IMG/VR virus record: IMGVR_UViG_3300029258_003221
Location: 124,001 to 188,000 of that record
Length of the DNA: 64,000 nt
Strand: one strand, 5' to 3'
Shown here: positions 4,742 through 21,029 of the stretch, piece by piece
How positions within the stretch are numbered: position 1 is the first letter of the stretch
Layout of the letters: the number at the start of each line of letters is the position of its first letter
The notes under the pieces: model-generated
What the model was told of the DNA's origin: nothing
Database searches by the model: none
Seen by the model: only the letters and a program-made list of their open reading frames with translations
Made by a program: the position numbers and the translations under genes

Positions 4742-4798
4742 AGGGGGGTGTGGTGTCAGCGGGGAGCCGAGGGTGGGGTCTCCCCCACCACCTTTTTG
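4742..4798. other. G/C-run junction with hairpin (candidate genome end, packaging or entry site)
   Basis: GGGGGGTG run and GGTGGGG-TCTC-CCCCACC inverted repeat at an abrupt switch in base composition and motif content. Confidence 0.35.
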
Positions 4799-4847
4799 GC
4801 TCGGAATTGTTGAATTAAAAGTTTTGCAACACCAATGTTCTGGGTGT

Positions 4848-5075
4848 CTAAGACCAATGTCTTGGCTTCATTACATCTTCCATCCAGCGGATGAATTCCT
4901 CCCGTGTCAGATCTGGAGGAGCCTCCACCGTCTGTATGTCCTCAGCATCACGCTGATCCAGTGATTCAATGAGTGGTGGCTGCTGTTCGGCCCATGCTCG
5001 TCGTGCCTCGTACTCGCTGCTGTCCTGTTCGTCGATGGCTGGACAGTCACCGAGGTCATCCGTATGCCCCTGCAT
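4848..5075 (-). CDS. hypothetical protein
   Basis: ORF, start moved to ATG with GGGAG RBS; stop overlaps GACACCC. Confidence 0.6.
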   Translation of the reverse strand: MQGHTDDLGDCPAIDEQDSSEYEARRAWAEQQPPLIESLDQRDAEDIQTVEAPPDLTREEFIRWMEDVMKPRHWS

Positions 5076-5149
5076 TGTCGTGCTCCCGTGGGTGGTGTTA
5101 GTGGGTGAGCCCCAGTGACTCACCCTCTCAACACTACTTAACCGGGTGT

Positions 5150-5596
5150 CTAGTAGTATGCTTTCCTCATCTCCTTTTCAAACATTGCGATGTCATCACG
5201 GCACCGTTGAGCCATGTCCTCCAGCACATGAACAGTTCCGATGACGTGGCTGGCTGGTTGTTCTTTGAGGGTAGCGATTGCCTTCTCAAGGGTTCGCAGT
5301 TCAGTGTGTGCCTTGTCAGCGGCTTCAGAGTTCTGTCGAAAGATCTCATCAGCGTTGGCGTTGAGAGTGTCCTCCCATTCCTGTTCAACTTTGAGGCACT
5401 CTTCCCAGAGTTCCTGTTCCTCGTCTTCAGCTTCCTGCTGGAGCAGGTCTTCGTGTTCCTGAATCAGTGCCTTGCTGAGGGCTCGCTGTGTCTTGCGTCG
5501 TCCCCGTTTGTCGTAAGTGTCAGACCCGTGAGTCAACCAGCAGTCTCCGTTGACCTTGCGTGCTCGTCGTGTGGCGTTGGCGATGGCTGAAACCAT
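5150..5596 (-). CDS. hypothetical protein, Arg-rich N-terminus and acidic coiled coil
   Basis: 148 aa, AGGAG RBS. Confidence 0.75.
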   Translation of the reverse strand: MVSAIANATRRARKVNGDCWLTHGSDTYDKRGRRKTQRALSKALIQEHEDLLQQEAEDEEQELWEECLKVEQEWEDTLNANADEIFRQNSEAADKAHTELRTLEKAIATLKEQPASHVIGTVHVLEDMAQRCRDDIAMFEKEMRKAYY

Positions 5597-5665
5597 TGTT
5601 GTGCTCCTGTGTTTCCCTTATGAGTGGGCAGTGTTGTTGTCACTGCCCACTCTCAGGGTGTCAGC

Positions 5666-5863
5666 TTAGGCAGCCCATGCGTGCTGTCGTGTATCGTTGA
5701 GAGCGGCAGAGAGGGCAGCGTTTGTTGCTTTGGTGGCTGCTGCGTCGTAGCCTCTCAGAAAAGTTTCGCCTTCGTGGCTTTCGGGATCAAGACCATGACT
5801 CATTGGCCATCGATCTTCACCGTGTTTGTAGGCATCCCATCCCATTTGGTAATACTTGTTCAT
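5666..5863 (-). CDS. hypothetical protein (C-terminal WAA)
   Basis: 65 aa, GGGGAG RBS. Confidence 0.7.
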   Translation of the reverse strand: MNKYYQMGWDAYKHGEDRWPMSHGLDPESHEGETFLRGYDAAATKATNAALSAALNDTRQHAWAA

Positions 5864-5909
5864 CGTTCTCCCCTGTTGGTGTTGTGTTGACAGTGTTTGA
5901 GTGGGTGTC

Positions 5910-6113
5910 TCATCCGAGTGGCACTGCTGGCATAATCCGCTTCATCACTGACCTGATCTCGTCGGTGACTTCACCGCCGTTAGCGACATGTCCCGCCAGA
6001 TCAATACATGCAGTGATTGCACTGGTTCTGAGGTATTTGTCATTGCGTGGTGAGTCACCTTTGAAGGCATCAACGTCTTCGGCAGTTCTCTTGTTGTAGT
6101 TCATGTCGAACAT
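5910..6113 (-). CDS. hypothetical protein
   Basis: 67 aa, flanked by motifs. Confidence 0.65.
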   Translation of the reverse strand: MFDMNYNKRTAEDVDAFKGDSPRNDKYLRTSAITACIDLAGHVANGGEVTDEIRSVMKRIMPAVPLG

Positions 6114-6237
6114 TGTTTTCCTGTGGGTGTCTTAGAGCAACTGAAAACGAACTGACGGGTTTGCCTTGACCACATTCAGTCCGTTATCAGTTGTTCTACA
6201 TGGCTCAGTCTCAGGAGGAGGAATTGAAGTGTTGCCG

Positions 6238-6435
6238 TTAGGCAGCACGTCGTCGGCTTGATCCCTTCTTAGTTCGTTTCAGGGTCAGCGGTTGTTTCTG
6301 ACGGTCAATCAGACGAACACCGTCAGTGGCGTTGTTTAACATCGCATAGTCGCACCTCGCTTCCTGTTCTTGATCAGAATTATATTCGGTTACACCCATT
6401 CCGGGAGCGATGACAACAAATCGGTTCTTGAACAT
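6238..6435 (-). CDS. hypothetical protein (C-terminal RRRAA)
   Basis: start moved to ATG with AGGAG RBS. Confidence 0.7.
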   Translation of the reverse strand: MFKNRFVVIAPGMGVTEYNSDQEQEARCDYAMLNNATDGVRLIDRQKQPLTLKRTKKGSSRRRAA

Positions 6436-6479
6436 TTGGCTCTCCTTTGTTGTTGATGATGTTCTGTTACTGGGTGTCG

Positions 6480-6656
6480 TCAATCACCAACATACCGAGC
6501 GAGTTCCATCTCACGTCTGAGTTTTTTCATCTCTTCCGGTTTGGCGTTGTCCATTCTTTTGCGAACGTCCTGTTGCCAGCATCGGTGATAGTGGTAGTGA
6601 TCTCCGGCGTTTCCTTCGTTAGGTCGGCCACAGAATTTGCACTTACCTTTTTTCAT
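6480..6656 (-). CDS. small Cys/His (putative Zn-binding) protein
   Basis: CKFC...HRC motif, GGAG RBS. Confidence 0.65.
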   Translation of the reverse strand: MKKGKCKFCGRPNEGNAGDHYHYHRCWQQDVRKRMDNAKPEEMKKLRREMELARYVGD

Positions 6657-6699
6657 GGTTTCGCTCCGTTGTGGTGTTGTTGATGTATGTTTATTAGGT

Positions 6700-6735
6700 G
6701 TCCACCGGGACAGGGAGCCAACTGTCCCGGTGGAC
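6700..6735 (-). terminator. strong intergenic hairpin
   Basis: 14-bp perfect stem GTCCACCGGGACAG/CTGTCCCGGTGGAC whose 3' arm runs into GACACCT; no U-tract. Confidence 0.45.
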
Positions 6736-6752
6736 TCACCACCAACCCACAC

Positions 6753-7043
6753 TCACATATTAAACCATTTGCCGCTGATGGCATCAGCGTATCGTTCCCC
6801 AGTGTAGTGAGGATCATCGCTGTTTATTTTGCTCCAACCGTAGGTTGTCACGTGCATTCGGTACTGCCCTGACGTGGCTTTGTCCCCTCGTTTGCGTCGT
6901 CGTCGTTCAACAGCGTATCGTTGAATCATCTTGTCAAAGCTGTCGAAGGCGAGTTCAATTTCCCGTGGCTTATCAGGGTCACGTTCCATGTGATTGAATT
7001 GTACCCGCATTGAAAAGCTGACAGTTTGCGGGTGTGTAGTCAT
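6753..7043 (-). CDS. hypothetical protein
   Basis: 96 aa, RBS, preceded by the intergenic module. Confidence 0.7.
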   Translation of the reverse strand: MTTHPQTVSFSMRVQFNHMERDPDKPREIELAFDSFDKMIQRYAVERRRRKRGDKATSGQYRMHVTTYGWSKINSDDPHYTGERYADAISGKWFNM

Positions 7044-7084
7044 TTGTCGTCCTTCCGTTGTTGTTGATGTTGTGTTAGTGGGTG

Positions 7085-7237
7085 TCAGCTTTTGACTTCC
7101 ACCTGTTCTCTTGGGTTGACGAAGAACGTGTTTCCTTTGCTGTCCATAGCTTCATTGTCGCCAGTTTTGATACATTCTCCATTCCAGCAGTGAAACGGGC
7201 GATTCTTGGGCAGTGTGTGAAACTCAACCATTTTCAT
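7085..7237 (-). CDS. hypothetical protein
   Basis: start moved; TGA stop overlaps motif. Confidence 0.6.
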   Translation of the reverse strand: MKMVEFHTLPKNRPFHCWNGECIKTGDNEAMDSKGNTFFVNPREQVEVKS

Positions 7238-7281
7238 GTCGTCCCTCTTAAGGAGTGTTGGTGATGTTGTGTTAGTGGGTG

Positions 7282-7485
7282 TCAGACAAAGCAGGACAGT
7301 GTTTGACTTGGGTGATGAGGTTGAACGGCTTCCCAGCAATTCAGAGCAGGCACCCAGATGCCGCCTGTTGTGTAGTTGGGATTGTCAACGATGAGGAACT
7401 CGGTTGTTCCGTTGTTCTGTCGATCATCGATGACCCAGCCGTGTTTCTCTTCACCGTTGATTGTGTAGAAGGTTTCGTTGTTCAT
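7282..7485 (-). CDS. hypothetical protein
   Basis: 67 aa; TGA stop overlaps motif. Confidence 0.65.
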   Translation of the reverse strand: MNNETFYTINGEEKHGWVIDDRQNNGTTEFLIVDNPNYTTGGIWVPALNCWEAVQPHHPSQTLSCFV

Positions 7486-7504
7486 GGCTCTTTACAGGGT
7501 GTCG

Positions 7505-7630
7505 TCAAGCAGCCCGACGTTCGTATTTCTTTTCCCGTCGTTTAGCTCTTTCCCTGTCCTTTTTTCTTCCTTGTTCACGTTTCTGGCGACGGCGATCTCT
7601 GTCGTGTCCCGTCTCTTCTCTGATGTACAT
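7505..7630 (-). CDS. 41-aa highly basic peptide ending RRAA (not in ORF track)
   Basis: manual translation MYIREETGHDRDRRRQKREQGRKKDRERAKRREKKYERRAA*; ATG directly follows GACACCC. Confidence 0.6.
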   Translation of the reverse strand: MYIREETGHDRDRRRQKREQGRKKDRERAKRREKKYERRAA

Positions 7631-7692
7631 GGGTGTCTCTTTGAGGGTTTGAAGAATGCCACCGGGATTTGTTCCCGGTGGCGTTAGGTTGT

Positions 7693-8094
7693 TTACGCTG
7701 CTCGCTGTGCGGCGAGTTCGGCGTCGGCCTGTTCCATTCCCAGCAGTACCAGAGCCGGGATATTAGTTTGTCCACCTTCCATGTGTTTGAAGGACTCGCA
7801 GAATTCATCCCATTCCCTTGCCGACCGGATAGGCACATCATTGCCGTATCGTGGTTTTTCGTACCATTCGGCGATATTAGGCCCACGTCTCTTGTGGCTG
7901 AACTTCACCGTATCCCCTCGTTTGGTGACACAAACAAAGGTGTTGTCAGTGAAAGTGATTCGATAGCCACCGGGAACCATTGTTTCCTTGAGTTCCCCTT
8001 TCTTGTTGGTTGTCATGATCGGAATCCAGTTTCGCTTTGCTTCTTTGATTCCGATTGGCTTACACGGTTTCAGTGTTTTGATGGCCTGCACCAT
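7693..8094 (-). CDS. hypothetical protein (C-terminal QRAA)
   Basis: 133 aa, GGGAG RBS. Confidence 0.75.
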   Translation of the reverse strand: MVQAIKTLKPCKPIGIKEAKRNWIPIMTTNKKGELKETMVPGGYRITFTDNTFVCVTKRGDTVKFSHKRRGPNIAEWYEKPRYGNDVPIRSAREWDEFCESFKHMEGGQTNIPALVLLGMEQADAELAAQRAA

Positions 8095-8144
8095 GATCGT
8101 CTCCCTGTTAGGAAAGTGTTGTTGATGTTTTGTTATTGGGTGTC

Positions 8145-8303
8145 TTAGGGGACTTCAACCCAATCGGTATAACCTTTGACTCGCCATGCTTCGTTGTAGA
8201 TATCGTCACCATCGTAATTGACAGTCACAACATCGAACTGTTCGAGGATCAGAGTTCGGAAGTAGAGTTTTCCGTTCTCTCGTTTGAATTCCACCGATTC
8301 CAT
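8145..8303 (-). CDS. hypothetical protein
   Basis: start moved to ATG with GGGAG RBS; TAA-GACACCC. Confidence 0.65.
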   Translation of the reverse strand: MESVEFKRENGKLYFRTLILEQFDVVTVNYDGDDIYNEAWRVKGYTDWVEVP

Positions 8304-8341
8304 TGTTTCGTCTCCCGTTGTTGGTAGTCTGTCAGTGGGTG

Positions 8342-8611
8342 TCAGACTCCACAAACTTTGTAGACGAGTTTGGTCCAGAACTTGTAGTCTTTTTCGACGA
8401 GCTGGTCGAAAACTTCCTGACTGGCTTGCATGGCGATGGATTCAAACTGTCCACCAACAACCATTTGTTCTTGCCATTTGCTGTCGGGGAAGGACTCTCG
8501 TTTTTCTTCGGCGATCTTTTTACGACGTTCGTATTCTTTGTCGCCGAGGTTGTTTCTGTGGCGTTGTTCGACTTCATTTTCTGGTGTGATTTCCCATTGA
8601 ACAGCGGACAT
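8342..8611 (-). CDS. hypothetical protein
   Basis: start moved to ATG with GGAGG RBS. Confidence 0.65.
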   Translation of the reverse strand: MSAVQWEITPENEVEQRHRNNLGDKEYERRKKIAEEKRESFPDSKWQEQMVVGGQFESIAMQASQEVFDQLVEKDYKFWTKLVYKVCGV

Positions 8612-8656
8612 GTTCGTCCTCCAGTTGAGTGTTAGTTGTTGATGGTTTGTTAGTGG

Positions 8657-8686
8657 GTGTCCCCCGGCGTTGTTGCCGGGGGACAC
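8657..8686 (-). terminator. hairpin downstream of ParB-like gene
   Basis: 12-bp stem GTGTCCCCCGGC/GCCGGGGGACAC whose 3' arm overlaps GACACCC. Confidence 0.45.
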
Positions 8687-8696
8687 GGTTCGTTGG

Positions 8697-9542
8697 TTAT
8701 GCAGCCCGTCGTCGGTTTCCGATGTTGTAGACCTGTTCCATTGCTGCAAAGCAGGCACTTCGGTTTGGTCGGTCGGTATCGTCTCGACAGGAGTTCTGTG
8801 CAATTCGGAATATCTCCGCAGCGGATCGTCGTCCCAGTCGATCTTTGATATCTTCAATTGAGGCGTCACCATAGGCTCTGATGAAATCAACCAGTCCTCT
8901 CAAGAACCCATTGCCACCAGCTTGGTATTCAAGCCCTCGCTTGCTCCTCCACAAACTGAGAATTTCAAACAGTTCGTTGAGAATGTCATGTGAATACGCT
9001 TCGGTAAGGGGTGTCAGAGACCGGATATCTGCCGTTCTGGTGTTGAATCCGGGAGTGTTGGGGATTGAAAATCCCCATTGTGTCAAGCCGTCTTCGATAT
9101 CGACAGCAAAAGGATATTCAGCTTCCAATGCTGCTGAAAATGCGTCCCAGACATTCATTCGACGACTGTTCTGAGTCAGTTCGTGGAAGATTGCAGCACA
9201 AGTTGCTTTGTTGACTCCGAAGTGGATTTCGCAAGTGATGTACTTTTGATGTTCCATCATTTCCATCATCCACAATGTGTGTCGTCCATCAATGGGTAGC
9301 AACTTTCCTTTGACATAGACTAAGATTGGATTTCTCACAGCCCGTCGATTGAAACTGTCTTTGAGTTCCAAGCTGTGCGACTTCACGTGGTCACGGAAGT
9401 TGTAGTTGTTGTTCTTTCCCAACTCGATTTTTTCTCTGTCTACCAGACAGAGATAAGCCAAGCTGGTAAGCTTGCAAAAACATTTTTCAATTCCTGCTTT
9501 GTGGTGTGTTTTTGCCAGTTTCTTAGGCTTAAAATTGTCCAC
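8697..9542 (-). CDS. ParB/Srx-like N-terminal domain protein (DUF6551-like)
   Basis: 281 aa; NPILV...PIDGRHTL motif followed by a helical domain; ends RRRAA. Confidence 0.65.
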   Translation of the reverse strand: MDNFKPKKLAKTHHKAGIEKCFCKLTSLAYLCLVDREKIELGKNNNYNFRDHVKSHSLELKDSFNRRAVRNPILVYVKGKLLPIDGRHTLWMMEMMEHQKYITCEIHFGVNKATCAAIFHELTQNSRRMNVWDAFSAALEAEYPFAVDIEDGLTQWGFSIPNTPGFNTRTADIRSLTPLTEAYSHDILNELFEILSLWRSKRGLEYQAGGNGFLRGLVDFIRAYGDASIEDIKDRLGRRSAAEIFRIAQNSCRDDTDRPNRSACFAAMEQVYNIGNRRRAA

Positions 9543-9610
9543 GTTTACTCTCCCCGAGTGTTAGAAAATGTTTTGAGCGTTGTTTGCTCACTGCCCTATC
9601 GCCGGGTGTC

Positions 9611-9649
9611 AAAAACATCACCCCCGACAACCCGGTATTGTCGGGGGTG
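9611..9649 (-). terminator. intrinsic terminator
   Basis: 12-bp stem CACCCCCGACAA/TTGTCGGGGGTG, then ATGTTTTT, then GACACCC. Confidence 0.6.
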
Positions 9650-9680
9650 TAAAAATATTTTCTTGTAAAAAGCGACTCAT

Positions 9681-9899
9681 TCAACAGAACCCTGCTGTAT
9701 AGAATCGTAGACGCTTGTCTTTTGGGCCGATTGGCAGTATCATTTCGACTACCACATCAGCCAGTTTGTTCGGCGGCGGTTTACCGCTGTACCGGGCAAA
9801 GTAGAATATCAGAAATGCAAACATCATTGCTCCAGTTTCAGGAAGAACCCAGACCTCCCTGTTTAGCACAGGGCACCCCGATTTCGTGCTCCTAGTCAC
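9681..9899 (-). CDS. hypothetical protein
   Basis: 72 aa ORF filling a gap; weak RBS. Confidence 0.35.
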   Translation of the reverse strand: MTRSTKSGCPVLNREVWVLPETGAMMFAFLIFYFARYSGKPPPNKLADVVVEMILPIGPKDKRLRFYTAGFC

Positions 9900-9957
9900 T
9901 CACAACGAACTGGACTAGCTGGGCGGGCGTTGTTTCGATGAGTTGTTAGTGGGTGTC

Positions 9958-10365
9958 TTACTCAACCCGGTCGTGGACTGAGATTGGTGCAGTGTAGTTA
10001 ATGTCATCATGCACCATTGCATTAGTGGTGCTGATGTAGCTGCCACCAGCCATGACGTGTTTGCCATTGCGAATTGCTCCGACCCACTTGGCGGCATAGG
10101 GGTTATCGAGACTTGGCGGTCCTGATCGTGGCAGGCAGAGGATCAGACTGTCATTGGTCAGGAAGTGACAACCTTTGACAATCTCTCTCACCTGACCATA
10201 TCTGGGCAGATTTCCATCGACATAGACACGCCAGACATTGATTGAGTCTCTTCGGCGGGTGATGCCATCATTGGTGCAGTCGTGGTGATTGATCAGCACC
10301 GTCATTCGGTGAACATGGGCACTGCATCGTTGTGCAATTGTTGGATTGGTCGTGGCGATTGTCAT
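9958..10365 (-). CDS. hypothetical protein
   Basis: 135 aa, GGGGAGAG RBS; TAA-GACACCC. Confidence 0.75.
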   Translation of the reverse strand: MTIATTNPTIAQRCSAHVHRMTVLINHHDCTNDGITRRRDSINVWRVYVDGNLPRYGQVREIVKGCHFLTNDSLILCLPRSGPPSLDNPYAAKWVGAIRNGKHVMAGGSYISTTNAMVHDDINYTAPISVHDRVE

Positions 10366-10420
10366 TGTCTCTCCCCAGAGAAATGTTTTGTTGTTGATGG
10401 TTGGTTACTGGGTGTCAGAT

Positions 10421-10560
10421 TGGAGATGGAGGGACTCGAACCCTCGTCCAAACTTATCACGTTATCCCAAACACGAGCGAAACATGGGCCTTTTCTCGTT
10501 GTCGCCTACCCTATAGCGGCGACTGTTCAGCGTGATAGCCTGTCAATACCATTCATCCCC
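10421..10560 (-). ncRNA. miniature tmRNA-like RNA (tRNA-like domain only, 140 nt)
   Basis: 5' GGGGAUG-AAUGGUAUUGAC and 3' GGAC-GAGGG-UUCGAGU-CCCUC-CAUCUCC-A; acceptor stem with G3.U70 and A73; no D-stem; helix 2 present; no room for an MLD or pseudoknots. Confidence 0.8.
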
Positions 10561-10576
10561 GAAAGAGTTAACTGTG

Positions 10577-10652
10577 ACACGGCCACCACCACGTTGGCGC
10601 TCCTCGTGACCGTGCCCCCGGTTACTTAACGCCCTACCCTGCCACAACCGGG
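10577..10652 (-). ncRNA. candidate structured RNA (two hairpins with complementary loops)
   Basis: stems CCCGGUU/AACCGGG and GCACGGUCAC/GUGGCCGUGU; loops GGCGUU and AGCGCC can pair. Confidence 0.35.
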
Positions 10653-10713
10653 TGCATCAGGGATTCAGGCCTAGTTGACTTGCCTTTGCCAGAGGCTTAT
10701 TGGAGCGGCTTTG

Positions 10714-11178
10714 TTACGCTGTTACTGGGTGTCGGACAACACACTCAACACCGGCTTTGTCGCAGATGCCTTTGAGTAGTTCGAGCCAGTTTGGTTGTTT
10801 GTTGAAGATATCCCCGTCGATTCCGAAGATTACTTCTTTCCCATCGTTGTACTCTTCCGAACTTGATCGGATTGCGTAATTACGATCCACAATCCACATG
10901 TGTGGTGTTCGGCTTGACTTCGTTGCCAGTTTACCGGGTGTCCTCAGATAGCACATATGATCGTCACCGAACAAATGTGCATCACTAGAAACCTTGACAC
11001 GAGCCAGATTGAGCCCAATGCCCATTAGTCGTTGACGAATCAGATGCAGCAGGTGAATTTCAGCTCCCCAACCATGAACATGGCGGGTGTATCCACTTGC
11101 CGTAGCTTTTTGGTCGGTGTCCTCTTTCTGGACAACGAGTGTTCCTGAGTCTTTGAACAGATTGAACTTGATTTTCAT
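10714..11178 (-). CDS. hypothetical protein
   Basis: start moved to ATG with GGGGAGA RBS. Confidence 0.75.
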   Translation of the reverse strand: MKIKFNLFKDSGTLVVQKEDTDQKATASGYTRHVHGWGAEIHLLHLIRQRLMGIGLNLARVKVSSDAHLFGDDHMCYLRTPGKLATKSSRTPHMWIVDRNYAIRSSSEEYNDGKEVIFGIDGDIFNKQPNWLELLKGICDKAGVECVVRHPVTA

Positions 11179-11220
11179 TGTTTCTCCCCATGAGCGTTGT
11201 TGATGAATTGTCAACGGGTG

Positions 11221-11403
11221 TCATCGAGGGATGAGCCAGACCACTACCCCGCATTGTGAGGACACAAGATAATCAGTCAGGTGCCACAATTTGAGACGAT
11301 CTTCGTGCTGTTGATCCACCACAACCGAAACTGCATTAGTTTCGGTTGTGGGAGTAGTGGCTTTGATGCCGGTCTTTTCAGACCATTGTTTGAGTTTCAT
11401 CAC
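11221..11403 (-). CDS. hypothetical protein
   Basis: 60 aa, coupled to upstream stop. Confidence 0.6.
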   Translation of the reverse strand: MMKLKQWSEKTGIKATTPTTETNAVSVVVDQQHEDRLKLWHLTDYLVSSQCGVVVWLIPR

Positions 11404-11795
11404 TTTCCCCGAAGTTTGTCGGCTTGTCGAACTAAACCCATGACGGGTGTCATCGGCCAGTTAACTCCCTGTTCCATCAGCCAGAATCGGGCTTCAGGTT
11501 CATCATTGAGGAATCGTTCAAATGCCCAGATTGGCATACGATCATCGGTCGGCGTTGACCGCATGACAGCATAAATCAGAACTTTGAAGTTGTCTTTTGC
11601 TACCTGTTCATCGGGTGTCTCGGCTGACTCACCGACAACTGGCCAATAACAACCGTAACCTGCAAGAAAGCCACGTGCGTTATCATCATCATTGAGCCAG
11701 TTGGTGAAGTTGACAATCGGCAGGACTGGAGGATCAAATCCACAATCCATGACCAAGTGATTTCCCAACTCCATCAAGATCTTTTTCAGGTTCAT
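11400..11795 (-). CDS. hypothetical protein
   Basis: 131 aa, GGGGAGAG RBS. Confidence 0.75.
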   Translation of the reverse strand: MNLKKILMELGNHLVMDCGFDPPVLPIVNFTNWLNDDDNARGFLAGYGCYWPVVGESAETPDEQVAKDNFKVLIYAVMRSTPTDDRMPIWAFERFLNDEPEARFWLMEQGVNWPMTPVMGLVRQADKLRGK

Positions 11796-11964
11796 TTTTC
11801 TCTCCCCAAATCAGTGCATTGTTCGTTGTGACCTGTCTGACACTTGTTTCTTGGGTGTCAACAGGTTTGACGTGGGCATAGCCCGGTGGGCTGTGCAGCA
11901 CTTGCCCAATGAGTTTGGGATAGTTCACCCGGTTAAACTCATTGTTGACTACCAGAAATGTCAT
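11734..11964 (-). CDS. hypothetical protein
   Basis: 76 aa, AGGAG RBS; overlaps next gene. Confidence 0.5.
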   Translation of the reverse strand: MTFLVVNNEFNRVNYPKLIGQVLHSPPGYAHVKPVDTQETSVRQVTTNNALIWGEKNEPEKDLDGVGKSLGHGLWI

Positions 11965-12287
11965 GATGACTCCTTGGGTGTCAGCAATGGGAGGAGTGCA
12001 GCGTATTCTTCGCTATTCTCATAGAAATACTCGGTTGTCTTGAGAGTTCCTTCCCAGACAACCACCTGATTGTACTCAGTCAGACCGACAGCGTAGATTC
12101 TGCCGTCATCACCGTCCACCAGAATCATATTCTGATGGTAGGTAGTAAACTTTGGTTTGCCGGTTGTAGTGCGACCGACACGAGAGCCACGTTTGTTGGT
12201 TTCGACGAAGAATTTCGCCGTAACACGTTTGCGACCATGAGGCCAATCTTCGATTGTTGCCTCAGTACGTGGATTACTGAACTTCAT
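11961..12287 (-). CDS. hypothetical protein
   Basis: start moved to ATG with GGGGAGAG RBS. Confidence 0.75.
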   Translation of the reverse strand: MKFSNPRTEATIEDWPHGRKRVTAKFFVETNKRGSRVGRTTTGKPKFTTYHQNMILVDGDDGRIYAVGLTEYNQVVVWEGTLKTTEYFYENSEEYAALLPLLTPKESS

Positions 12288-12333
12288 TGTTCTCTCCCCA
12301 GAGAAGTTGTTTTGATGTTTTGTTAGTGGGTGT

Positions 12334-12516
12334 CTAAGGTTTGGCGATACCACGTTCCCGTAGGACAGTATCAGCATCAACACCACGTTTGGCGAGTTCT
12401 TCCCGTGCCTCATAGTACAGGCTCAGGTCTTTCCCGTTAGCACCGAGATCAGCAGTAGCCTCTTTTTCGAGGACGTTCTCAACCTGCCATGTTTTCAGCG
12501 ATGAACAGTAACTCAT
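12334..12516 (-). CDS. hypothetical protein
   Basis: start moved; GGGGAG RBS. Confidence 0.65.
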   Translation of the reverse strand: MSYCSSLKTWQVENVLEKEATADLGANGKDLSLYYEAREELAKRGVDADTVLRERGIAKP

Positions 12517-12776
12517 TGTTTTCTCCCCAGAGTTTTTTCCCATTTGATGGGTGTCATAACCAGCCGAAACATTCGGCCATTTTCTTTTTCGACAAACAGG
12601 ACAAAGTTTCCTTTGTCGTCTGTTTCTGATCCTTTTATGATCCCGATATTATCCAGCCACGTTGACATGGATTCTTCAGGAATAATCGAATCAATTTCAG
12701 CCTGAATCAGGTCGGAAAATGCTTTTGTGACTTTCCGACGCTGATTGGCTTCTTTCCGGGTGTCAGACTTCGACAT
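12513..12776 (-). CDS. hypothetical protein
   Basis: 87 aa, coupled to neighbours. Confidence 0.65.
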   Translation of the reverse strand: MSKSDTRKEANQRRKVTKAFSDLIQAEIDSIIPEESMSTWLDNIGIIKGSETDDKGNFVLFVEKENGRMFRLVMTPIKWEKTLGRKQ

Positions 12777-13107
12777 GATAAAACGCTCTGTCGATTTCTT
12801 TCACGGTGTAGGCGTTGTGCAATTCATTTGCCAACTGTTCCACCAAATCTCGGGCATTACGGTGCAGAACTCCACTGGAGTTTGCCCAACTAGACCCATT
12901 GTCGTTTGACCATTTGCGACCGAGCAGTCGGGCGACGTGTCCGCTGATGTTGGTCAGGGTGTTTCCATCCATGACCATGACAGCGAAATATTTCTTTTCC
13001 GGGTGTCGTCGTCCGTAGTCAATTCGCATTGTGTAGATCGTGGTTCCCAGATCACACAGTCGTTCCAGACGTTTCCGAGCGTTTGCGATTCGTTCAGCGT
13101 TATCCAT
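12763..13107 (-). CDS. hypothetical phage protein
   Basis: coupled ORF in operon. Confidence 0.7.
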   Translation of the reverse strand: MDNAERIANARKRLERLCDLGTTIYTMRIDYGRRHPEKKYFAVMVMDGNTLTNISGHVARLLGRKWSNDNGSSWANSSGVLHRNARDLVEQLANELHNAYTVKEIDRAFYHVEV

Positions 13108-13414
13108 CGTTCTCAATGTCCCTCACTTTGTTGGTAGTGACTTCCCCGCCAGTCATTCCATTCAGGGTGTCAACAAACAGGTCGAGCCATTTGTAACTAA
13201 CGGCTTCTTCGCCAGTCAGTTCAAAGTTGTAGCAGACAATACAACCATTGCTGTTTGGAGGAGGAGCAGGAACAGAATCGGCGAATCCTTTCCACTCAAT
13301 TTTTAGTCCACTCATTGGCCCTGCCATGAACGCAAGCATTGGCTGGAGTGTTTCATTTTCGTGCAGGTTGTAGGGTGCTTTGCCTTTGATTTCGACACGT
13401 TTGACGTTTGACAT
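13100..13414 (-). CDS. hypothetical protein
   Basis: start moved; GGGAGAG RBS. Confidence 0.7.
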   Translation of the reverse strand: MSNVKRVEIKGKAPYNLHENETLQPMLAFMAGPMSGLKIEWKGFADSVPAPPPNSNGCIVCYNFELTGEEAVSYKWLDLFVDTLNGMTGGEVTTNKVRDIENDG

Positions 13415-13433
13415 TGATCTCTCCCAAGGTGTC

Positions 13434-13497
13434 AAAAATGAGACGGCGACAGCCTACCCCGTGGGCACCGTTACTGGCTACTGGACTGCCCCGTCTC
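13434..13497 (-). terminator. long hairpin plus U-tract (terminator or small RNA)
   Basis: GAGACGG-GGCAGTC/GGCTGTC-G-CCGTCTC, then ATTTTT, then GACACCT. Confidence 0.5.
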
Positions 13498-13598
13498 GTG
13501 CAGTACGTTACAGGGTGTCCAATAACACCAACCCGGATAAAGGCCAAATAAGCCTTCGCTCAACTATAGTGCCATCCTTTAACCGGGTCGGCTAAATG

Positions 13599-14171
13599 TC
13601 ACGCAGTAGCGAGGGAGTAGATTTCCCCGCCGTACCTGATTTCCAGAACATTACTCAACAGATAGTCACGACAATAAATTGCCTTTTCTGTTTTCTGTCG
13701 AGACGATTCTTTTTTCTTGGCGACGAACGGCAGAACTTCTGCCTTATCGACTGGTTCCCCGTCGATTTCGTATCGCCACTCCAATGACCGTTCTACCTTG
13801 AGTTCAAGATAGATCAGTTTGTCACCACCTTTGTTGGTATGACGTACAAAGGGTGTCCCCTTTACACGATGCCCCCACGCTCGTGGGAGTGGCTCGAAGT
13901 GCTCAATGTGACCGTCTGGCGTCAACGGCTGTTCTTCCCTCATTCGCTGGTTGTTGACGCTGTTGGCGTAAATCCAGTTGAGGAAACCATTGACTTCCGA
14001 CCGTTTCTTGAGCCGACCGTCTTTGTGTGCCTGCCAGAACGGATTAGGAACGCCGTCCATTTTTGCACGCAGGTTATGCTCTTTTGTCAGAGCAACGATT
14101 GTTGCCGGGAAGGCAGAAGAATTTCGTGCCAGCAAATCCCGGACAAGTTCAAAACGAGTAATCGTTTTCAT
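13599..14171 (-). CDS. phage-type hypothetical protein
   Basis: 190 aa, GGGGAGAG RBS. Confidence 0.8.
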   Translation of the reverse strand: MKTITRFELVRDLLARNSSAFPATIVALTKEHNLRAKMDGVPNPFWQAHKDGRLKKRSEVNGFLNWIYANSVNNQRMREEQPLTPDGHIEHFEPLPRAWGHRVKGTPFVRHTNKGGDKLIYLELKVERSLEWRYEIDGEPVDKAEVLPFVAKKKESSRQKTEKAIYCRDYLLSNVLEIRYGGEIYSLATA

Positions 14172-14222
14172 TGTTCTCTCCCCAGAGAAGTTTTGTTGAT
14201 GTTACACCCCGTTACTGGGTGT

Positions 14223-14414
14223 CTACTTTTCAGGCCACTTGCCTGTCTCGAATGCCTCAGCACATTTCCGCACAAATTCTCGTTCATGCATGTACGTTGC
14301 TTCACGCACTGGTGTGCAATCAATTGTGCGAGATTCCATCGTCTTGAGATTGATGATTTTTCTCGTGCCCAGTCGCCAATTGCGACCGGAATCAGTAATG
14401 TTTACGTGGTCCAT
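14223..14414 (-). CDS. hypothetical protein
   Basis: start moved; GGGGAGA RBS. Confidence 0.65.
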   Translation of the reverse strand: MDHVNITDSGRNWRLGTRKIINLKTMESRTIDCTPVREATYMHEREFVRKCAEAFETGKWPEK

Positions 14415-14499
14415 TGTTTCTCCCCGTTGTTTGAAAGCTCTCAACCGTCCTGCCCTGTTAGACGGGTGTCCAACAGGGCAGGCGGCGGGGAGAGTTTCG

Positions 14500-15525
14500 T
14501 TATGCCACCATTTCCAGAGCGAGCTGGAATGCTCGTTCCTTAAAGGCAGCCCCGTCATTCTCGATAACCGACTTGTATCGGTTCTCGTTCGTTGCTCGTT
14601 TGTCACCACGAACAGTCCGACGTTTGCCATGGTCAATAGCCTCAGTCACACTGTTAAACAGTGCCCACCAAGTGCCCTTGACTCCCTTCATCTGCTGTCC
14701 GGGCTGTTTGAACATATAGCGAAGTTCGCCAACCTTTCGGTCGTGAGCATTCTTTGCTCGGTTGTATCCTCGTTCCGTTGAGTACGTTTCCTCAACAGGT
14801 GTCGGATACAGTTCTTCCATGTAATCCGCTGCACGTTCTTTGTCGTATCCCACCAACAGTTTCTGTGCGTTTTCACGAAACAGGGTGAACTGTCGATCAA
14901 ACTGACTGATGGCGTCTTTCGCCGCATCCAGCTTGAGTTTCATGTCACCAGAGTGCCGAATGGCAATCTGATTCGTGTTGCCTTCCAGTGCTGCACGAAC
15001 CGTGTTAGCACAAACGGCACGAACGCTTGTAGGTGTCAGAATTGTTGATCCGCCACCATGCTGAAGTTTCGCCATGACATAGCGAAAACTCACATCGCCG
15101 GGAACAACTTCGTCATAGGACGGCATACGAGCGAGCAGAACAACGCTCTTTCCGCCATTCAGGACGAAGACTGATTCGTATCGAATCACGCCGTCCATGT
15201 GCAGGGAATCGAGAAACTCGAATCCTTCACGGTTCTGGAGTGGTTCGTACTTGTCACCCACTACGTGGAGGAGTTTGCCGGTGTCTGTTCTGACCAGACG
15301 ATACCAACCGTCATCGGCGTTGCCGTCAGTGTCACAGACAGGACGTTTTTCCACCTTGAAGAAAATTGAAGGAAGAATTTCCTCAATTTCCTGTGAACAG
15401 GGTGCCAGACCTTCACCCGGTCGCCAGACTTCACCAAGGCCATGCCATGCGGGTGAATTCGCATAGAGTGCTTCGTGAGCCAATCGACCATCGGACAGTC
15501 TTACTGCTTCAATCTCATGTGACAT
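14500..15525 (-). CDS. DUF932 / TIGR03299-like phage-plasmid protein
   Basis: PAWHGLG, YEPLQN.E.F.F, TPTSVRAVCANT, IRHSG and GTWWALFNSVTEAIDH motifs typical of the family. Confidence 0.85.
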   Translation of the reverse strand: MSHEIEAVRLSDGRLAHEALYANSPAWHGLGEVWRPGEGLAPCSQEIEEILPSIFFKVEKRPVCDTDGNADDGWYRLVRTDTGKLLHVVGDKYEPLQNREGFEFLDSLHMDGVIRYESVFVLNGGKSVVLLARMPSYDEVVPGDVSFRYVMAKLQHGGGSTILTPTSVRAVCANTVRAALEGNTNQIAIRHSGDMKLKLDAAKDAISQFDRQFTLFRENAQKLLVGYDKERAADYMEELYPTPVEETYSTERGYNRAKNAHDRKVGELRYMFKQPGQQMKGVKGTWWALFNSVTEAIDHGKRRTVRGDKRATNENRYKSVIENDGAAFKERAFQLALEMVA

Positions 15526-15610
15526 AGTCACTCTCCCAAAAAGAAAACTTTTGTTTTGGCGATTGTTCGCCACTGTCCCATCATAGGGTGTCCACTTTTA
15601 CTCCCAGCGA

Positions 15611-15946
15611 TCAGGAAGTAAGAGTCCAAGGCCGATGGGTAGCCTCGATTCCTTGATTGTCACGAATTTCACGATGATCCTCATCCAGCATATTCGTGAT
15701 AGTATTGCAGTCTCCTCGTGTCAGGTGACCATCCAGCGTCCCTTGAACAATGAATGTCGCTGTGACTGCCGGATGTCGGCGGGACAGATTCTGAATCACA
15801 GCAACATAGTTTTTGTTGTGCCAATCAGCGATCAAATTACTCACTGATCGGTCGATGACTTCGTTGTACTCAGGTGTCACACTTACTCTCCTGATATTTG
15901 GCCCACAGCAGCGGGCATTCGGTTGCCAGCCATTCCAACACGTCAC
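15611..15946 (-). CDS. hypothetical protein (true start probably nearer 15877)
   Basis: ORF in operon. Confidence 0.55.
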   Translation of the reverse strand: MTCWNGWQPNARCCGPNIRRVSVTPEYNEVIDRSVSNLIADWHNKNYVAVIQNLSRRHPAVTATFIVQGTLDGHLTRGDCNTITNMLDEDHREIRDNQGIEATHRPWTLTS

Positions 15947-16658
15947 TCAGTGTTCCCGTCTGAGAACTAGCGTGAGTTGCAACAGCGTTGTATTCGTCTT
16001 GCCATTGTTCGGGTGTCGCACCCCATCCAATGCAAAGACCATCTTCCCGCATTCCGTACTGTCGATCCTCAGCATCCTGACGAATGTTCTCAATGTCTGA
16101 TTCCACAGCGGCAATGAACTCCAGACTGTCAACAGTTACACCGTGTCGAGCAGCCACTTCTTTGGCAATGCCTTCCAGCTTCTGTCGTTTCTCAGCCTGT
16201 TGCCTTGCTTCGTGGGTTTCCGGGGTGTCCACTCGTTGAACGATGGCAACACCACAGTTGTACTCAAACAGAGTTTGAAACAGCTCCAAACCATTTTCAT
16301 TTGGAATGCGGGTATCGATCAGAAGATACTTCAGGCAATCCTCATCAAGATTGAAGACAAATTCCTTTGCCATGGCGGCAACGTCACAAGTCTTGTAATA
16401 CCGACGATCACCGTACAAATCAGGATCGTCGTTAATCATGGTGACCACGATAGTGGGAATGCCCACACGCTCAATAATCGTGGAAACATATTTTTCCATT
16501 CGCTGCTTGCGAAAGGCACAAAGTGCGGCCTGTCCATAACCTTCGCCGATGAATTCAAGCATGTCGTTCATTTTGTCTCTCCCGAAACAACTTTTGTATT
16601 TGTCACTGTCTGCTTGATGGGTGTCAGCTAACTCCCTGACCGTTGGGAGTGTTGTCAC
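15870..16658 (-). CDS. hypothetical protein
   Basis: 262 aa, GTG start just downstream of a promoter. Confidence 0.75.
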   Translation of the reverse strand: MTTLPTVRELADTHQADSDKYKSCFGRDKMNDMLEFIGEGYGQAALCAFRKQRMEKYVSTIIERVGIPTIVVTMINDDPDLYGDRRYYKTCDVAAMAKEFVFNLDEDCLKYLLIDTRIPNENGLELFQTLFEYNCGVAIVQRVDTPETHEARQQAEKRQKLEGIAKEVAARHGVTVDSLEFIAAVESDIENIRQDAEDRQYGMREDGLCIGWGATPEQWQDEYNAVATHASSQTGTLSDVLEWLATECPLLWAKYQESKCDT

Positions 16659-16664
16659 ATCCTT

Positions 16665-16693
16665 ATCCTACGGAGTAAGGAGTTAGCTGTAAA
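16665..16693 (-). promoter_or_regulatory. sigma70-type promoter, probably leaderless transcript
   Basis: TTTACA-N17-TAGGAT, 6 nt upstream of the GTG start; AT-rich tract upstream. Confidence 0.55.
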
Positions 16694-16725
16694 GCAGGTT
16701 CAGGAAAAATTCAGCAAAATTTCTG

Positions 16726-17091
16726 TCAGGTTTCTGCGATTTTGCTCTTGAACTCATCAATTCCATAGCAAAGCATTGATCTGTTATCACGATCTACCTT
16801 GCGGTATTTCTCCAGAGCATCTTCGGAGATTTCTTCCCATCCATTGGCCATGCACAGGTAGTATTTGCCCTCAACATGAGCAACGTCACCCATACTGACA
16901 GAGCAAAACGGCTTTGACTGAAACATGTTCTGCCCGTAGTGGAAAATGCGTTCCAGCAGGGCAAACACGTCTTTCTTGCCGTCCGTAGTACAGGCGTAGA
17001 CTTCACTTTCCGGGATATCAACCGGACGAATCTTTTCCACATCCTCAAAAGCCAGCATGTGGACCTTGAATGTAAGGTTAGCCATCTTCAC
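16726..17091 (-). CDS. YodL-like domain protein
   Basis: LERIFHYGQN...SVSMGDVAHVEGKYYLC..NGW resembles the YodL pattern. Confidence 0.6.
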   Translation of the reverse strand: MKMANLTFKVHMLAFEDVEKIRPVDIPESEVYACTTDGKKDVFALLERIFHYGQNMFQSKPFCSVSMGDVAHVEGKYYLCMANGWEEISEDALEKYRKVDRDNRSMLCYGIDEFKSKIAET

Positions 17092-17853: not shown

Positions 17854-17891
17854 AACACTCTCCCAAGTGAACAGGTTGTTTGAACAACTCG

Positions 17892-19176: not shown

Positions 19177-19242
19177 CAGACATTTCCTGTTTTAAGCCAA
19201 CCACCCATGCAGAATTGCAGAGGGGTGGCGGCGGGGAGAGTT

Positions 19243-20281: not shown

Positions 20282-20324
20282 CACTCTCTCCCCTAAAGTT
20301 GTGTTGATGAACAAATATCAGGTG

Positions 20325-20717: not shown

Positions 20718-20766
20718 TTGATTCTCCCTGTTGAAAAGAATTGTCTTACACCCAACTGTCAGGGTG

Positions 20767-21015: not shown

Positions 21016-21029
21016 TTGACTCTCCCAAA

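What the first reader, a model, noticed from the sequence alone, without database searches (positions are those of the whole stretch)
6436..14223. Recurrent intergenic module stop-GACACCC-(A/G)NTAAC-CA-rich spacer-RBS makes single-gene cassettes
Seen: many spacers share a 40-55 nt design. Sense-strand examples: GACACCCAGTAACAGAACATCATCAACAACAAAGGAGAG (6478), GACACCCACTAACACAACATCAACAAC (7086), GACACCCAATAACAAAACATCAACAAC (8144), GACACCCACTAACAAAACATCAAAACAACTTCTCTGGGGAGAGAACAATG (12334). Similar spacers lie near 7283, 10416, 14223, 21752, 32043 and 42924. The heptamer often directly follows or overlaps the upstream stop (TAA-GACACCC, TGAcaccc, TAGacaccc). In other cases it is fused between the SD and the ATG (GAGGACACCCATG). 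Inference: unrelated genes are packaged as standard expression units. The shared spacers could permit recombinational shuffling without an integrase, and the G-poor tract could be an unstructured ribosome standby leader.
Basis: partly seen in the sequence, partly recalled or inferred. Interest (0 to 1): 0.7.

Follow-up and report, generated by a model that had tools for sequence, protein, structure and literature searches.

The report
Strand-exclusive promoter-like hexamer in huge phage
A huge marine phage carries an ~80-kb one-way block of about 180 small genes in which the short word GACACC occurs about once per gene on the coding strand and never on the other strand; it most likely marks phage-specific transcription start signals, and gene cassettes are swapped at these spacers between strains.

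Summary
GACACCC occurs 99 times in the window, all on the minus strand (8 expected). The core is the hexamer GACACC. In an ~80-kb one-way gene block it occurs 179 times on the sense strand (25 expected) and 0 times on the antisense strand (19 expected). It is depleted in the rest of this 234-kb phage record.

About 48 sites sit 30-65 nt before a start codon. About 20 sit between the Shine-Dalgarno sequence and the ATG. About 111 lie inside genes, where Asp-Thr is written GAC-ACC 76 times against 13 expected.

Sites are spaced regularly, about one per gene. Weak flanks (TAA at +9..+11, a pyrimidine-purine step at +17/+18) fit an extended -10 bacterial promoter. A sigma-70-family gene lies at the head of the block, and relatives fetched through that sigma carry the same sense-only hexamer.

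A more distant clade, including a 622-kb contig, carries sense-only GGACC instead. There it is mostly inside genes and keeps its orientation through opposite-strand genes.

Strain comparison places insertions, a replacement and a deletion at the spacers, as with T4 PeSL cassettes.

Best reading: a phage-specific promoter core with a portable leader. No transcript data exist. A non-initiating polar DNA signal remains a serious rival.

The parts
4750..64000 (-). Window part of the one-way gene block ('region B', genome 128.8-207 kb). It holds about 140 of about 178 small minus-strand genes, at GC 44-49% against 38-42% elsewhere.
   Evidence: ORF and codon-model gene map; composition; motif confined to this block.
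6436..6478 (-). Leader module: GACACCC-AGTAAC-CA-rich tract-GGAGAG-ATG (ATG at 6435).
7238..7283 (-). Leader module of the same family (ATG at 7237).
8095..8144 (-). Leader module of the same family. A variant strain has an insertion here, with the 28 nt at 8118-8145 present on both sides of the extra DNA.
8612..8661 (-). Leader module, preceded by a GC hairpin. Its 5' edge (8663) is one end of a 920-nt replacement in strains X6 and X11.
8664..9583 (-). Cassette holding a 281-aa DUF6551-like gene. Strain X6 has 944 unrelated letters in its place. The ends lie 2 nt 5' of the motif at 8661 and 20 nt 3' of the motif at 9604-9610.
   Evidence: joint 8663/9584
10366..10416 (-). Leader module directly after the tmRNA-like gene.
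12288..12334 (-). Leader module: GACACCC-ACTAAC-AAAACATCAAAACAAC...TCTGGGGAGAGAACA-ATG.
14172..14223 (-). Leader module. Strains X6/X7 carry about 127 extra nt here, flanked by the 16 nt at 14208-14223. Strain X11 diverges exactly at 14223.
17097..17314 (-). 218-nt unit (a motif at 17150 plus a 56-aa ORF) absent from strains X6/X7. One end lies in the conserved TTGGGAGAG ribosome-binding segment.
21746..21797 (-). Composite of a strong stem-loop terminator (21761-21797), a T-run and GACACCC (21746-21752). This is the same layout as a T4 PeSL.
9604..9649 (-). Second terminator-then-motif composite.
33047..33060 (-). Example of the 'near' class: GAGGACACCC-ATG, with the motif filling the SD-to-ATG spacer. 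About 20 genes are of this kind.
52904..53651 (-). Example of deep intragenic sites: three GACACCC (53651, 53345, 52910), all in frame 0 (Asp-Thr-Pro), inside one 322-aa gene.
4772..4789 (.). GC hairpin with T-runs at the downstream end of the block, where it meets plus-strand genes.

Best explanation
GACACC(Y) is the core of a phage-specific promoter. It is read by host RNA polymerase carrying a phage-encoded sigma factor whose gene is the second gene of the block.

In this model the hexamer is an extended -10 (or '-15') element at -18..-13. TAA at +9..+11 from the G is the melting element at -9..-7. Transcription starts at the pyrimidine-purine step 7 nt further on, which gives 5' UTRs of about 25-30 nt with a strong Shine-Dalgarno sequence.

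The block is therefore transcribed from about one start signal per gene. The signal sits wherever it is cheapest: in a spacer, in the SD-to-ATG gap, or written into Asp-Thr codons of the upstream gene. The reverse orientation is purged because it would fire antisense.

Because many units begin with the same 16-50 nt, homologous recombination between them swaps, adds and removes single-gene cassettes, as PeSLs do in T4-type phages.

Shown: the statistics, the site anatomy, conservation in relatives, the sigma gene, and the strain breakpoints.
For: 1. Strand and region exclusivity. Block sense strand 179 against 25 expected; antisense 0 against 19; rest of the record 21 against about 52. No other word in any region behaves like this.
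2. Nucleotide-level selection. Asp-Thr is encoded GAC-ACC 76 of 126 times against 13.3 expected inside the block, with no such bias outside it.
3. About one site per gene. Of 177 start-to-start intervals, 111 hold exactly one site and 37 hold none (null 74). The position peak is 40-50 nt before the ATG.
4. Shared flanks in all three site classes, including deep intragenic sites tested against frame-matched controls: A at +11 (45% against 27%, p = 0.007) and a pyrimidine-purine step at +17/+18 (53% against 35%, p = 0.016; 75% in leaders). These are at the spacing of a -7 base and a +1 start.
5. Both strong sense-strand terminators are followed at once by a site. The same layout occurs in L015, L019 and L024.
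6. Sigma-70-type promoter matches are at chance (17 against 18.8), so host-type promoters do not explain expression of the block.
7. A sigma gene lies at genome 204721-205596 (Sigma70_r2 2e-8; phrog_351). Its model, pLDDT 82, matches full-length sigma chains in holoenzyme structures. Two sites lie upstream of it, one 43 nt before its ATG.
8. Six contigs with sigma homologues (34-57% identity) carry GACACC on the sense strand only: 25 sites against 0. Most are intergenic, followed by AT-rich sequence, with tandem sites upstream of the sigma gene.
Against: - There are no transcript data: no RNA run could be listed.
- No -35 element was found, although the sigma model has a region 4.
- Only 12-14 bits are conserved at deep sites.
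- 'Near' sites would start inside the adjacent gene, so they cannot serve it.
- In the sister clade (L025, L026) the polar word GGACC has no downstream TA or pyrimidine-purine feature. It is 89% intragenic, its count scales with gene length, and it keeps its orientation through two opposite-strand genes. That looks like a bare DNA-strand signal rather than a promoter.
- The relatives were fetched through the sigma, so sigma-motif co-occurrence is ascertained and not independent. Any lineage-specific reader would fit equally well.
- The gene map comes from my own heuristic caller.
Confidence: 0.45

Rival explanations
1. The hexamer (GGACC in the sister clade) is a polar DNA-level signal that does not itself start transcription. 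It could be a loading, nicking, pausing or re-loading site for a one-way machine acting on the whole domain. Examples: strand-specific nicks as in T5, possibly used to load a clamp or motor that licenses transcription as nicks do for T4 late genes; an ops-like site that keeps RNA polymerase termination-resistant; or an orienting signal for the RuvB-like motor encoded next to the sigma. The leader modules merely host it, because spacers are cheap places to put it.
For: - Regular spacing: CV 0.74 overall and 0.41 in the dense part, against a null of 0.99; only 5 gaps under 100 nt against 36 expected.
- In L025/L026 the pentamer is spaced by length (correlation with gene length r = 0.77, CV 0.57). 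It is selected at synonymous sites (45 against 15.2 +/- 3.2) and absent from the other strand (0 against 10.8 +/- 3.1). It keeps its DNA-strand orientation through two conserved opposite-strand genes, and has no promoter-like flanks.
- Total avoidance of the inverse orientation is what nicks (double-strand breaks) or colliding motors would impose.
- Synteny of HNH endonuclease, sigma and a RuvB-like AAA+ protein is conserved at the head of the domain.
Against: - In this phage the sites carry TAA and pyrimidine-purine flanks at promoter spacing.
- The sites peak at a fixed 40-50 nt from start codons, track gene number rather than length (3.0 per kb in short genes, 1.1 per kb in long ones), and follow terminators.
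- No nick or read-end evidence is obtainable, because only assembled contigs are held.
- No reader protein is identified.
Confidence: 0.3
2. The strand bias is an anti-restriction adaptation. A host Type III or Type ISP enzyme cleaves only between inversely oriented sites, so the phage keeps all copies of the site in one orientation, as T7 does with its 36 EcoP15 sites.
For: It is an asymmetric 5-6 bp word with every copy in one orientation within the block. The T7/EcoP15 precedent is described in PMC3874151.
Against: - It does not explain the 7-fold enrichment, the synonymous-codon selection for the word, the fixed distance to start codons, or the conserved flanks.
- Regions A and C carry the word in both orientations (5 and 16 copies), so the genome would still be cleavable.
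- The same word is kept in six divergent phages from different samples, whereas restriction specificities change quickly between hosts.
Confidence: 0.05
3. The complement, 5'-GGTGTC-3' on the plus strand, is a recognition site for the phage primase. T7 gp4 primes at GTGTC, TGGTC and GGGTC. Complementary-strand or lagging-strand synthesis would start at regular intervals on that strand.
For: - Both clade motifs contain GTC on the template strand (GGTGTC here; TGGTCC in L025). The T7 gp4 recognition sites are cited from my own knowledge.
- Spacing is regular.
- A Toprim primase-like gene is present at genome 64277-65437.
Against: - The sites are confined to one third of the record. Region A, 124 kb, has 13 sites, too few for a replicative primase.
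- There is no reason for absolute avoidance on the other strand or for depletion elsewhere.
- Primers would point opposite to a fork that moves co-directionally with transcription.
- Positional coupling to start codons is left unexplained.
Confidence: 0.05
4. The motif acts in the RNA, as a processing site that cuts the polycistronic transcript into single-gene mRNAs or as a translation enhancer or standby site.
For: The motif sits just after stop codons and at a fixed distance before the Shine-Dalgarno sequence in about 48 units. The following tract is A-rich.
Against: - 111 sites lie inside coding sequence, where cleavage would destroy the message.
- GGTGTC is totally absent from the sense strand, while GGGTGT, which would pair just as well, occurs 10 times. 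The exact word is therefore avoided in the inverse orientation on DNA, not as an RNA pairing partner.
- In L025 the word keeps its DNA-strand orientation inside opposite-strand genes.
- Leaders are no less structured than other gene starts.
Confidence: 0.05

Closest known systems
PeSLs (promoter-early stem-loop cassettes) of T4-type phages (PMC2839356, PMC4122927)
   Same: - Short conserved regulatory sequences recur between small, mostly unknown genes in variable regions of a T4-related myovirus (T4-like portal and terminase).
- Indels and replacements between close strains end in them.
- Some copies are terminator-plus-start-signal composites.
   Different: - The conserved core is not a sigma-70 early promoter; the sigma-70 scan is at chance.
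- Most copies have no stem-loop.
- The core also occurs about 110 times inside genes, is strictly one-stranded across ~80 kb, and is purged elsewhere. None of this is described for PeSLs in the abstracts and text I read.
Short single-element promoters of phage-directed transcription: T4 late TATAAATA with gp55, and the short promoter consensus sequences of jumbo phage AR9 (PMC5312081, PMC5449584)
   Same: An 8-12 nt element without a -35 box is read by phage-specified transcription machinery, occurs many times per genome, and is often placed inside upstream genes.
   Different: - The core here is GC-rich.
- The density is about one per gene.
- The inverse orientation is absolutely excluded.
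AR9 uses its own multisubunit polymerases, and none was found here.
T7-group single-subunit RNA polymerase promoters (T7 TAATACGACTCACTATAG; Syn5 ATTGGGCACCCGTAAG, PMC3950665)
   Same: With the G of GACACC placed at -11, the site reads G-11 A-10 C-9. C-7. Y-5.. T-2 A-1 R+1, with A/T at -16/-15. This matches the T7 layout, and CACCC-(R)NTAA resembles the Syn5 promoter.
   Different: - No T7-like polymerase gene is in the 234 kb held (the record is 44% complete).
- Only 7 or so positions are conserved, rather than 15-20.
Strand bias of EcoP15 sites in phage T7 (PMC3874151)
   Same: All copies of an asymmetric hexamer lie in one orientation.
   Different: Here the word is positively selected, positioned relative to genes, limited to one domain, and conserved across divergent phages.
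Integron gene-cassette arrays (attC sites)
   Same: A long one-way array of about 180 single-gene units, each with one copy of a repeated element; cassettes are gained and lost at the element.
   Different: - The element has no attC-like imperfect inverted repeat.
- It often lies inside coding sequence.
- Breakpoints look like homologous exchange within 16-28 nt of shared sequence.
- No integrase was sought or seen.

Membership tests
T4-type PeSL regulatory cassettes | Conserved short intergenic sequence recurring between small ORFs of a variable region | tested here: met
   48 leader-type sites; 15 leaders form one homologous family.
T4-type PeSL regulatory cassettes | Indel or replacement breakpoints between close relatives fall in the element | tested here: met
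   Breakpoints at 8118-8145, 8663/9584, 14208-14223 and 17096/17315 in strains X6, X7 and X11.
T4-type PeSL regulatory cassettes | The element contains a sigma-70-type early promoter | tested here: not met
   The sigma-70 consensus scan gives 17 matches against 18.8 in shuffles. The conserved core GACACC is unlike TTGACA or TATAAT.
T4-type PeSL regulatory cassettes | Stem-loop (terminator) joined to the promoter | tested here: inconclusive
   Present at 21752, 9610 and 8661 and in relatives L015, L019 and L024, but absent from most modules.
Sigma-dependent (extended -10) bacterial promoter | A cognate sigma factor is encoded or available | tested here: met
   Sigma-70-family gene in the block, with a full-length sigma fold. 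That it reads this motif is not shown.
Sigma-dependent (extended -10) bacterial promoter | An A/T-containing melting element, and a pyrimidine-purine start about 7 nt after it | tested here: met
   TAA at +9..+11. Pyrimidine-purine at +17/+18 in 75% of leader, 60% of near and 50% of deep sites, against a 24% background.
Sigma-dependent (extended -10) bacterial promoter | Primary transcripts start there | not testable with these tools
   No RNA run could be listed.
T7-like single-subunit RNA polymerase promoter | The phage encodes a T7-like RNA polymerase | tested here: inconclusive
   PF00940 is not found in the 234 kb, but the record is about 44% complete and the control genomes could not ring.
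T7-like single-subunit RNA polymerase promoter | 15-23 bp conserved promoter | tested here: not met
   Only the hexamer/heptamer and 3-5 weak flanking positions are conserved.
Type III restriction strand bias (T7/EcoP15 type) | All copies in the genome are in one orientation, with no selection for presence | tested here: not met
   Both orientations occur outside the block. There is strong positive selection for the word inside it.
Integron cassette array | attC with paired inverted core sites that forms a folded structure | tested here: not met
   No inverted-repeat structure: leaders fold no better than their shuffles, and only a bare hexamer is conserved at most sites.
T5-like site-specific single-strand nicks | Physical interruption of one strand at the site in virion DNA | not testable with these tools
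   Only assembled contigs of DNA runs are held. No read-end pile-ups can be seen.

The most novel reading that the evidence does not exclude
A clade of huge phages marks a 20-80+ kb early domain with a very short, strictly one-stranded DNA word: GACACC in one subclade and GGACC in another. The word is selected even at synonymous sites and kept through opposite-strand genes. It would be read by a conserved phage module (sigma factor plus RuvB-like AAA+ motor, with an HNH nuclease nearby) as a directional licensing signal, for example nick or loader sites that allow transcription or DNA handling in one direction only. That would be a domain-wide polarity code rather than a set of ordinary promoters.
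Probability: 0.2. Interest if true: 0.85.

Novelty: new variant of a known kind. Interest (0 to 1): 0.65.

Why it matters
If the sites are promoters, this is a clean natural example of about one start signal per gene across ~180 genes. It would define the specificity of an uncharacterised family of huge-phage sigma factors (145 homologues at E < 1e-10). It would also allow early or accessory domains of huge phages to be recognised from sequence alone.

The strain comparisons show that the same elements are the seams at which accessory genes are exchanged. This extends the PeSL idea beyond classical T4-like phages. It also gives a concrete mechanism for the turnover of the large unknown-gene cargo of huge phages.

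If the sites are instead a bare polar DNA signal, this would be a new kind of strand-orientation code in viral genomes.

Tried and rejected
- No near DNA match to the window in GenBank phages.
- Searching papers for the motif text returned only primer noise.
- No RNA sequencing run could be listed. DNA runs are assembled contigs only, so read ends and nicks are not visible.
- A terminase query found only the same phage. The metagenome scan with the sigma found only the two contigs already known.
- The whole 622-kb relative could not be scanned.
- The alignment of 20 sigmas was too diverse for a locus search. A 4-sequence alignment brought only unrelated sigma-bearing viral contigs without this motif.
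- The sigma-DNA complex prediction was not folded and gives no evidence.
- An alternative genetic code was considered and rejected: read-through of any one stop codon lengthens ORFs in all frames alike.
- The integron, RNA-processing, primase and pure anti-restriction readings were considered and ranked low, for the reasons given under the rival explanations.
- SNP depletion inside the hexamers between strains was estimated by hand from the partial lists printed (0 observed against about 2 expected). This was too weak to use.

Full report
WHAT THE WINDOW IS. The window is bases 124,001-188,000 of a 234,631-bp IMG/VR virus record, estimated 44% complete. The phage occurs in marine sediment and seawater metagenomes.

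The first 124 kb ('region A') encode a T4-like portal with an intein, a T4-type large terminase, baseplate and tail proteins, and an intein-bearing actin-like protein. This is a huge T4-related myovirus.

From window 4.8 kb to beyond the window end (genome 128.8-207 kb, 'region B') lies a block of about 178 mostly small genes, all on the minus strand. Its GC is 44-49% against 38-42% elsewhere. Few of its genes have family matches:
- ParB-like, 21817-22764
- DUF932, 14500-15525
- DUF6551-like, 8697-9542
- GNAT, 55791-56375
- further upstream, a GHKL ATPase, DUF3228, a RuvB-like AAA+ protein and a sigma factor

THE OBSERVATION. All quoted spacers exist at the stated coordinates.
- GACACCC occurs 99 times in the window, always on the minus strand, against 8.0 +/- 2.6 in shuffles.
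- In the whole record it occurs 118 times reverse and 0 times forward.
- GACACCCRNTAAC occurs 12 times against 0 expected.

The real core is the hexamer GACACC:
- Region B sense strand: 179 copies against 25 expected.
- Region B antisense strand: 0 against 19 expected.
- Region A: 4 and 9 copies, against about 20 expected per strand.
- The next base is C in 113 sites and T in 41.
- No single-mismatch variant is enriched.
- ACACCC on the antisense strand is at expectation (10 against 17.6), so the exact hexamer is what is excluded.

No other word in any part of the record shows a comparable strand asymmetry.

WHERE THE SITES ARE. These figures use my own gene map, built with a codon-model heuristic. 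There are three classes:
- 48 sites lie 30-65 nt before a start codon, with a peak at 40-50 nt.
- 20 lie 0-15 nt before it, typically AGGACACCY-ATG, filling the gap between the Shine-Dalgarno sequence and the ATG.
- 111 lie deeper inside coding sequence, mostly in frame 0.

Within region B, Asp-Thr is written GAC-ACC in 76 of 126 cases against 13.3 expected from codon usage. Outside region B there is no such bias, 8 against 6.5.

Spacing is more even than random. The CV is 0.74, and 0.41 in the dense part, against a null of 0.99. Only 5 gaps are under 100 nt, where 36 would be expected.

Counted per gene, 111 of 177 start-to-start intervals hold exactly one site and 37 hold none, against a null of 74. 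Density falls from 3.0 per kb in short genes to 1.1 per kb in long ones. The rule is roughly one site per gene.

SITE ANATOMY. Counting from the G as position 0, all classes share:
- Y at +6
- A/T at +10
- A at +11
- A/T at -5 and -4
- a pyrimidine-purine step at +17/+18

The pyrimidine-purine step is present in 75% of leader sites, 60% of near sites and 50% of deep sites, against a 24% background. Against frame-matched GAC-codon controls, deep sites keep A at +11 (45% against 27%, p = 0.007). They also keep the +17/+18 step (53% against 35%, p = 0.016).

This is the geometry of an extended -10 bacterial promoter: core at -18..-13, TAA at -9..-7, start at +1.

It also resembles T7-group promoters if the G is placed at -11 (T7 GACTCAC-TATA-G; Syn5 GGGCACCC-GTAA-G, PMC3950665). 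However, no T7-like polymerase and no beta or beta' homologue is present in the 234 kb held.

Sigma-70 consensus promoters are at chance level in the block. The two strong sense-strand terminators, at 21761-21797 and 9619-9649, are each followed immediately by a site.

Fifteen leaders form one homologous family, GACACCC-RNTAAC-A.AACATCAACAAC.

Leaders are A-rich with somewhat low G, 17% against 24%. They are no less folded than other gene starts, p = 0.25.

A CANDIDATE READER, AND RELATIVES. The second gene of the block (genome 204721-205596, minus strand) encodes a 291-aa sigma-70-family protein.
- It matches Sigma70_r2 at 2e-8 and phrog_351, and has weak PDB sequence matches to FliA/WhiG-type sigmas.
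- Its AlphaFold model (pLDDT 82) aligns over about 300 columns with sigma chains in holoenzyme structures.
- Two sites lie upstream of it, one 43 nt before its ATG.
- It is followed by a RuvB-like AAA+ gene.
- An HNH gene lies just upstream of the block.

The sigma belongs to a family of at least 145 homologues at E < 1e-10.

Contigs carrying homologues of 34-57% identity (L015, L019, L020, L021, L023, L024) hold 25 GACACC on the sense strand and none on the antisense strand. Most are intergenic, followed by AT-rich sequence such as CAATAG, GCATAG or ATAATG. Terminators lie just upstream, and two to four tandem sites lie before the sigma gene.

Contigs with more distant homologues (27-29% identity) do not enrich GACACC. 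These are L025, from a 622-kb contig, and L026/L027. They carry GGACC instead: 55 against 0 in L025 and 26 against 0 in L026.
- Synonymous-codon shuffles of L025 give 15.2 +/- 3.2 for GGACC (45 observed) and 10.8 +/- 3.1 for GGTCC (0 observed).
- 89% of the L025 sites are intragenic.
- Site count scales with gene length, r = 0.77.
- Spacing is regular, CV 0.57.
- Orientation is kept through two conserved opposite-strand genes.
- No downstream TA or pyrimidine-purine feature is seen.

One caveat applies to all of this. The relatives were found through the sigma, so the sigma-motif link is not independent evidence.

CASSETTE EXCHANGE. Contigs of a ~98%-identical strain (runs X6, X7) and of lower-coverage strains (X9-X11) were laid on 12 kb of the window. 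Every structural difference touches a spacer element:
- Extra DNA at 8118-8145, with those 28 nt on both sides.
- A 920-nt cassette, 8664-9583, replaced by 944 other letters. Its ends lie 2 nt before the motif at 8661 and 20 nt after the motif at 9604-9610.
- About 127 extra nt at 14208-14223, with 16 nt shared on both sides.
- A 218-nt unit, 17097-17314, missing. It holds a motif and a 56-aa ORF, and one end lies in the conserved TTGGGAGAG segment.
- Strain X11 diverges at 8663 and at 14223.

Among distant relatives, L019 has an extra 145-aa gene between two sites upstream of the sigma. L020 and L021 have a 54-aa or 65-aa gene after it.

This is the behaviour described for PeSLs in T4-type phages (PMC2839356, PMC4122927). 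The exchange looks homologous, because similarity starts exactly at the 5' edge of GACACCC and the overlaps are 16-28 nt. There is no attC-like structure.

INTERPRETATION. The inverse orientation is excluded and the word is depleted elsewhere. Together with selection at synonymous sites, this shows a signal read on DNA in one orientation.

In this phage four features favour a promoter core read by phage-directed transcription, with the sigma as the obvious candidate (confidence 0.45):
- the one-per-gene rule
- the fixed distance to start codons
- the placement after terminators
- the promoter-like flanks

The bare, gene-independent GGACC of the sister clade keeps alive a non-initiating polar signal such as a nick, loader or re-loading site (0.3). 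Pure anti-restriction strand bias (PMC3874151), primase sites and RNA-level roles each explain only part of the data (about 0.05 each).

The 'unstructured standby leader' idea is not.

LIMITS.
- There are no transcript data.
- The host is unknown.
- The record is incomplete.
- The gene calls are heuristic.
- The strain sequences were seen only as laid contig pieces.

Noticed in passing
window 10420-10560 (-): A 140-nt tmRNA-like gene. Rfam RF00023 scores 53.7 bits against a gathering score of 47. ARAGORN also calls a tmRNA, with an atypical tag, DNEKRPMFRSCLG. Its 3' 33 nt (10421-10454) match many high-depth contigs of other organisms in the same metagenomes. A GACACCC leader module follows it directly. 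Strains differ by a 25-nt insertion at 10669, upstream of it.
   Followed up: partly
genome 204721-205596 (-) = L008:16721-17596; the next gene is L008:15504-16712: A conserved gene pair, a sigma-70-family factor plus a RuvB-like AAA+ ATPase, preceded by a 397-457-aa protein of unknown function and an HNH endonuclease. The synteny is kept in contigs from several environments, including a 622-kb contig.
   Followed up: partly
window 4800-64000 compared with 1-4800, and genome regions A and C: The one-way block has 5-8% higher GC than the rest of the phage record and a strong A-over-T excess on the sense strand. The cause is unknown. It could be different mutational exposure, heavy transcription, or a separate origin.
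   Followed up: no
L003:6804-9329 (-), L004:8676-10802 (-), L002:12858-14849 (-): Inteins with LAGLIDADG domains interrupt the T4-like portal and an actin-like (Volactin/MreB-like) protein. A third LAGLIDADG-containing ORF lies nearby.
   Followed up: no
L009:10788-12440 (-), L010:2664-3926 (-): The phage encodes a PARP-like protein with a WGR domain, and a ClpX-like ATPase. The PARP gene has a leader-type GACACC 35 nt before its ATG, one of the few sites outside the block.
   Followed up: no
window 14500-15525 (-), 21817-22764 (-), 8697-9542 (-): DUF932, ParB-like and DUF6551-like genes lie in a one-way array of small unknown genes. From my own knowledge, this gene set recalls the leading regions of conjugative plasmids, which are rich in anti-defence genes. 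The block may be an anti-defence or host-takeover arsenal.
   Followed up: no
L028 (IMGVR_UViG_3300037067_011000, 1-19573): An unrelated viral contig, fetched through a weak sigma match, has its own strand-biased repeated words: TGCTTCAC about 38 times and ACGGG 40 against 0. This suggests that strand-exclusive short words may be more widespread in phages.
   Followed up: no
window 14204-14223 and 20745-20768 (-): In a few modules the motif is followed by its near-complement (ACACCC-N6-8-GGGTGT), forming a hairpin. The complement always stops short of the final C, consistent with strict avoidance of GGTGTC on the sense strand.
   Followed up: partly
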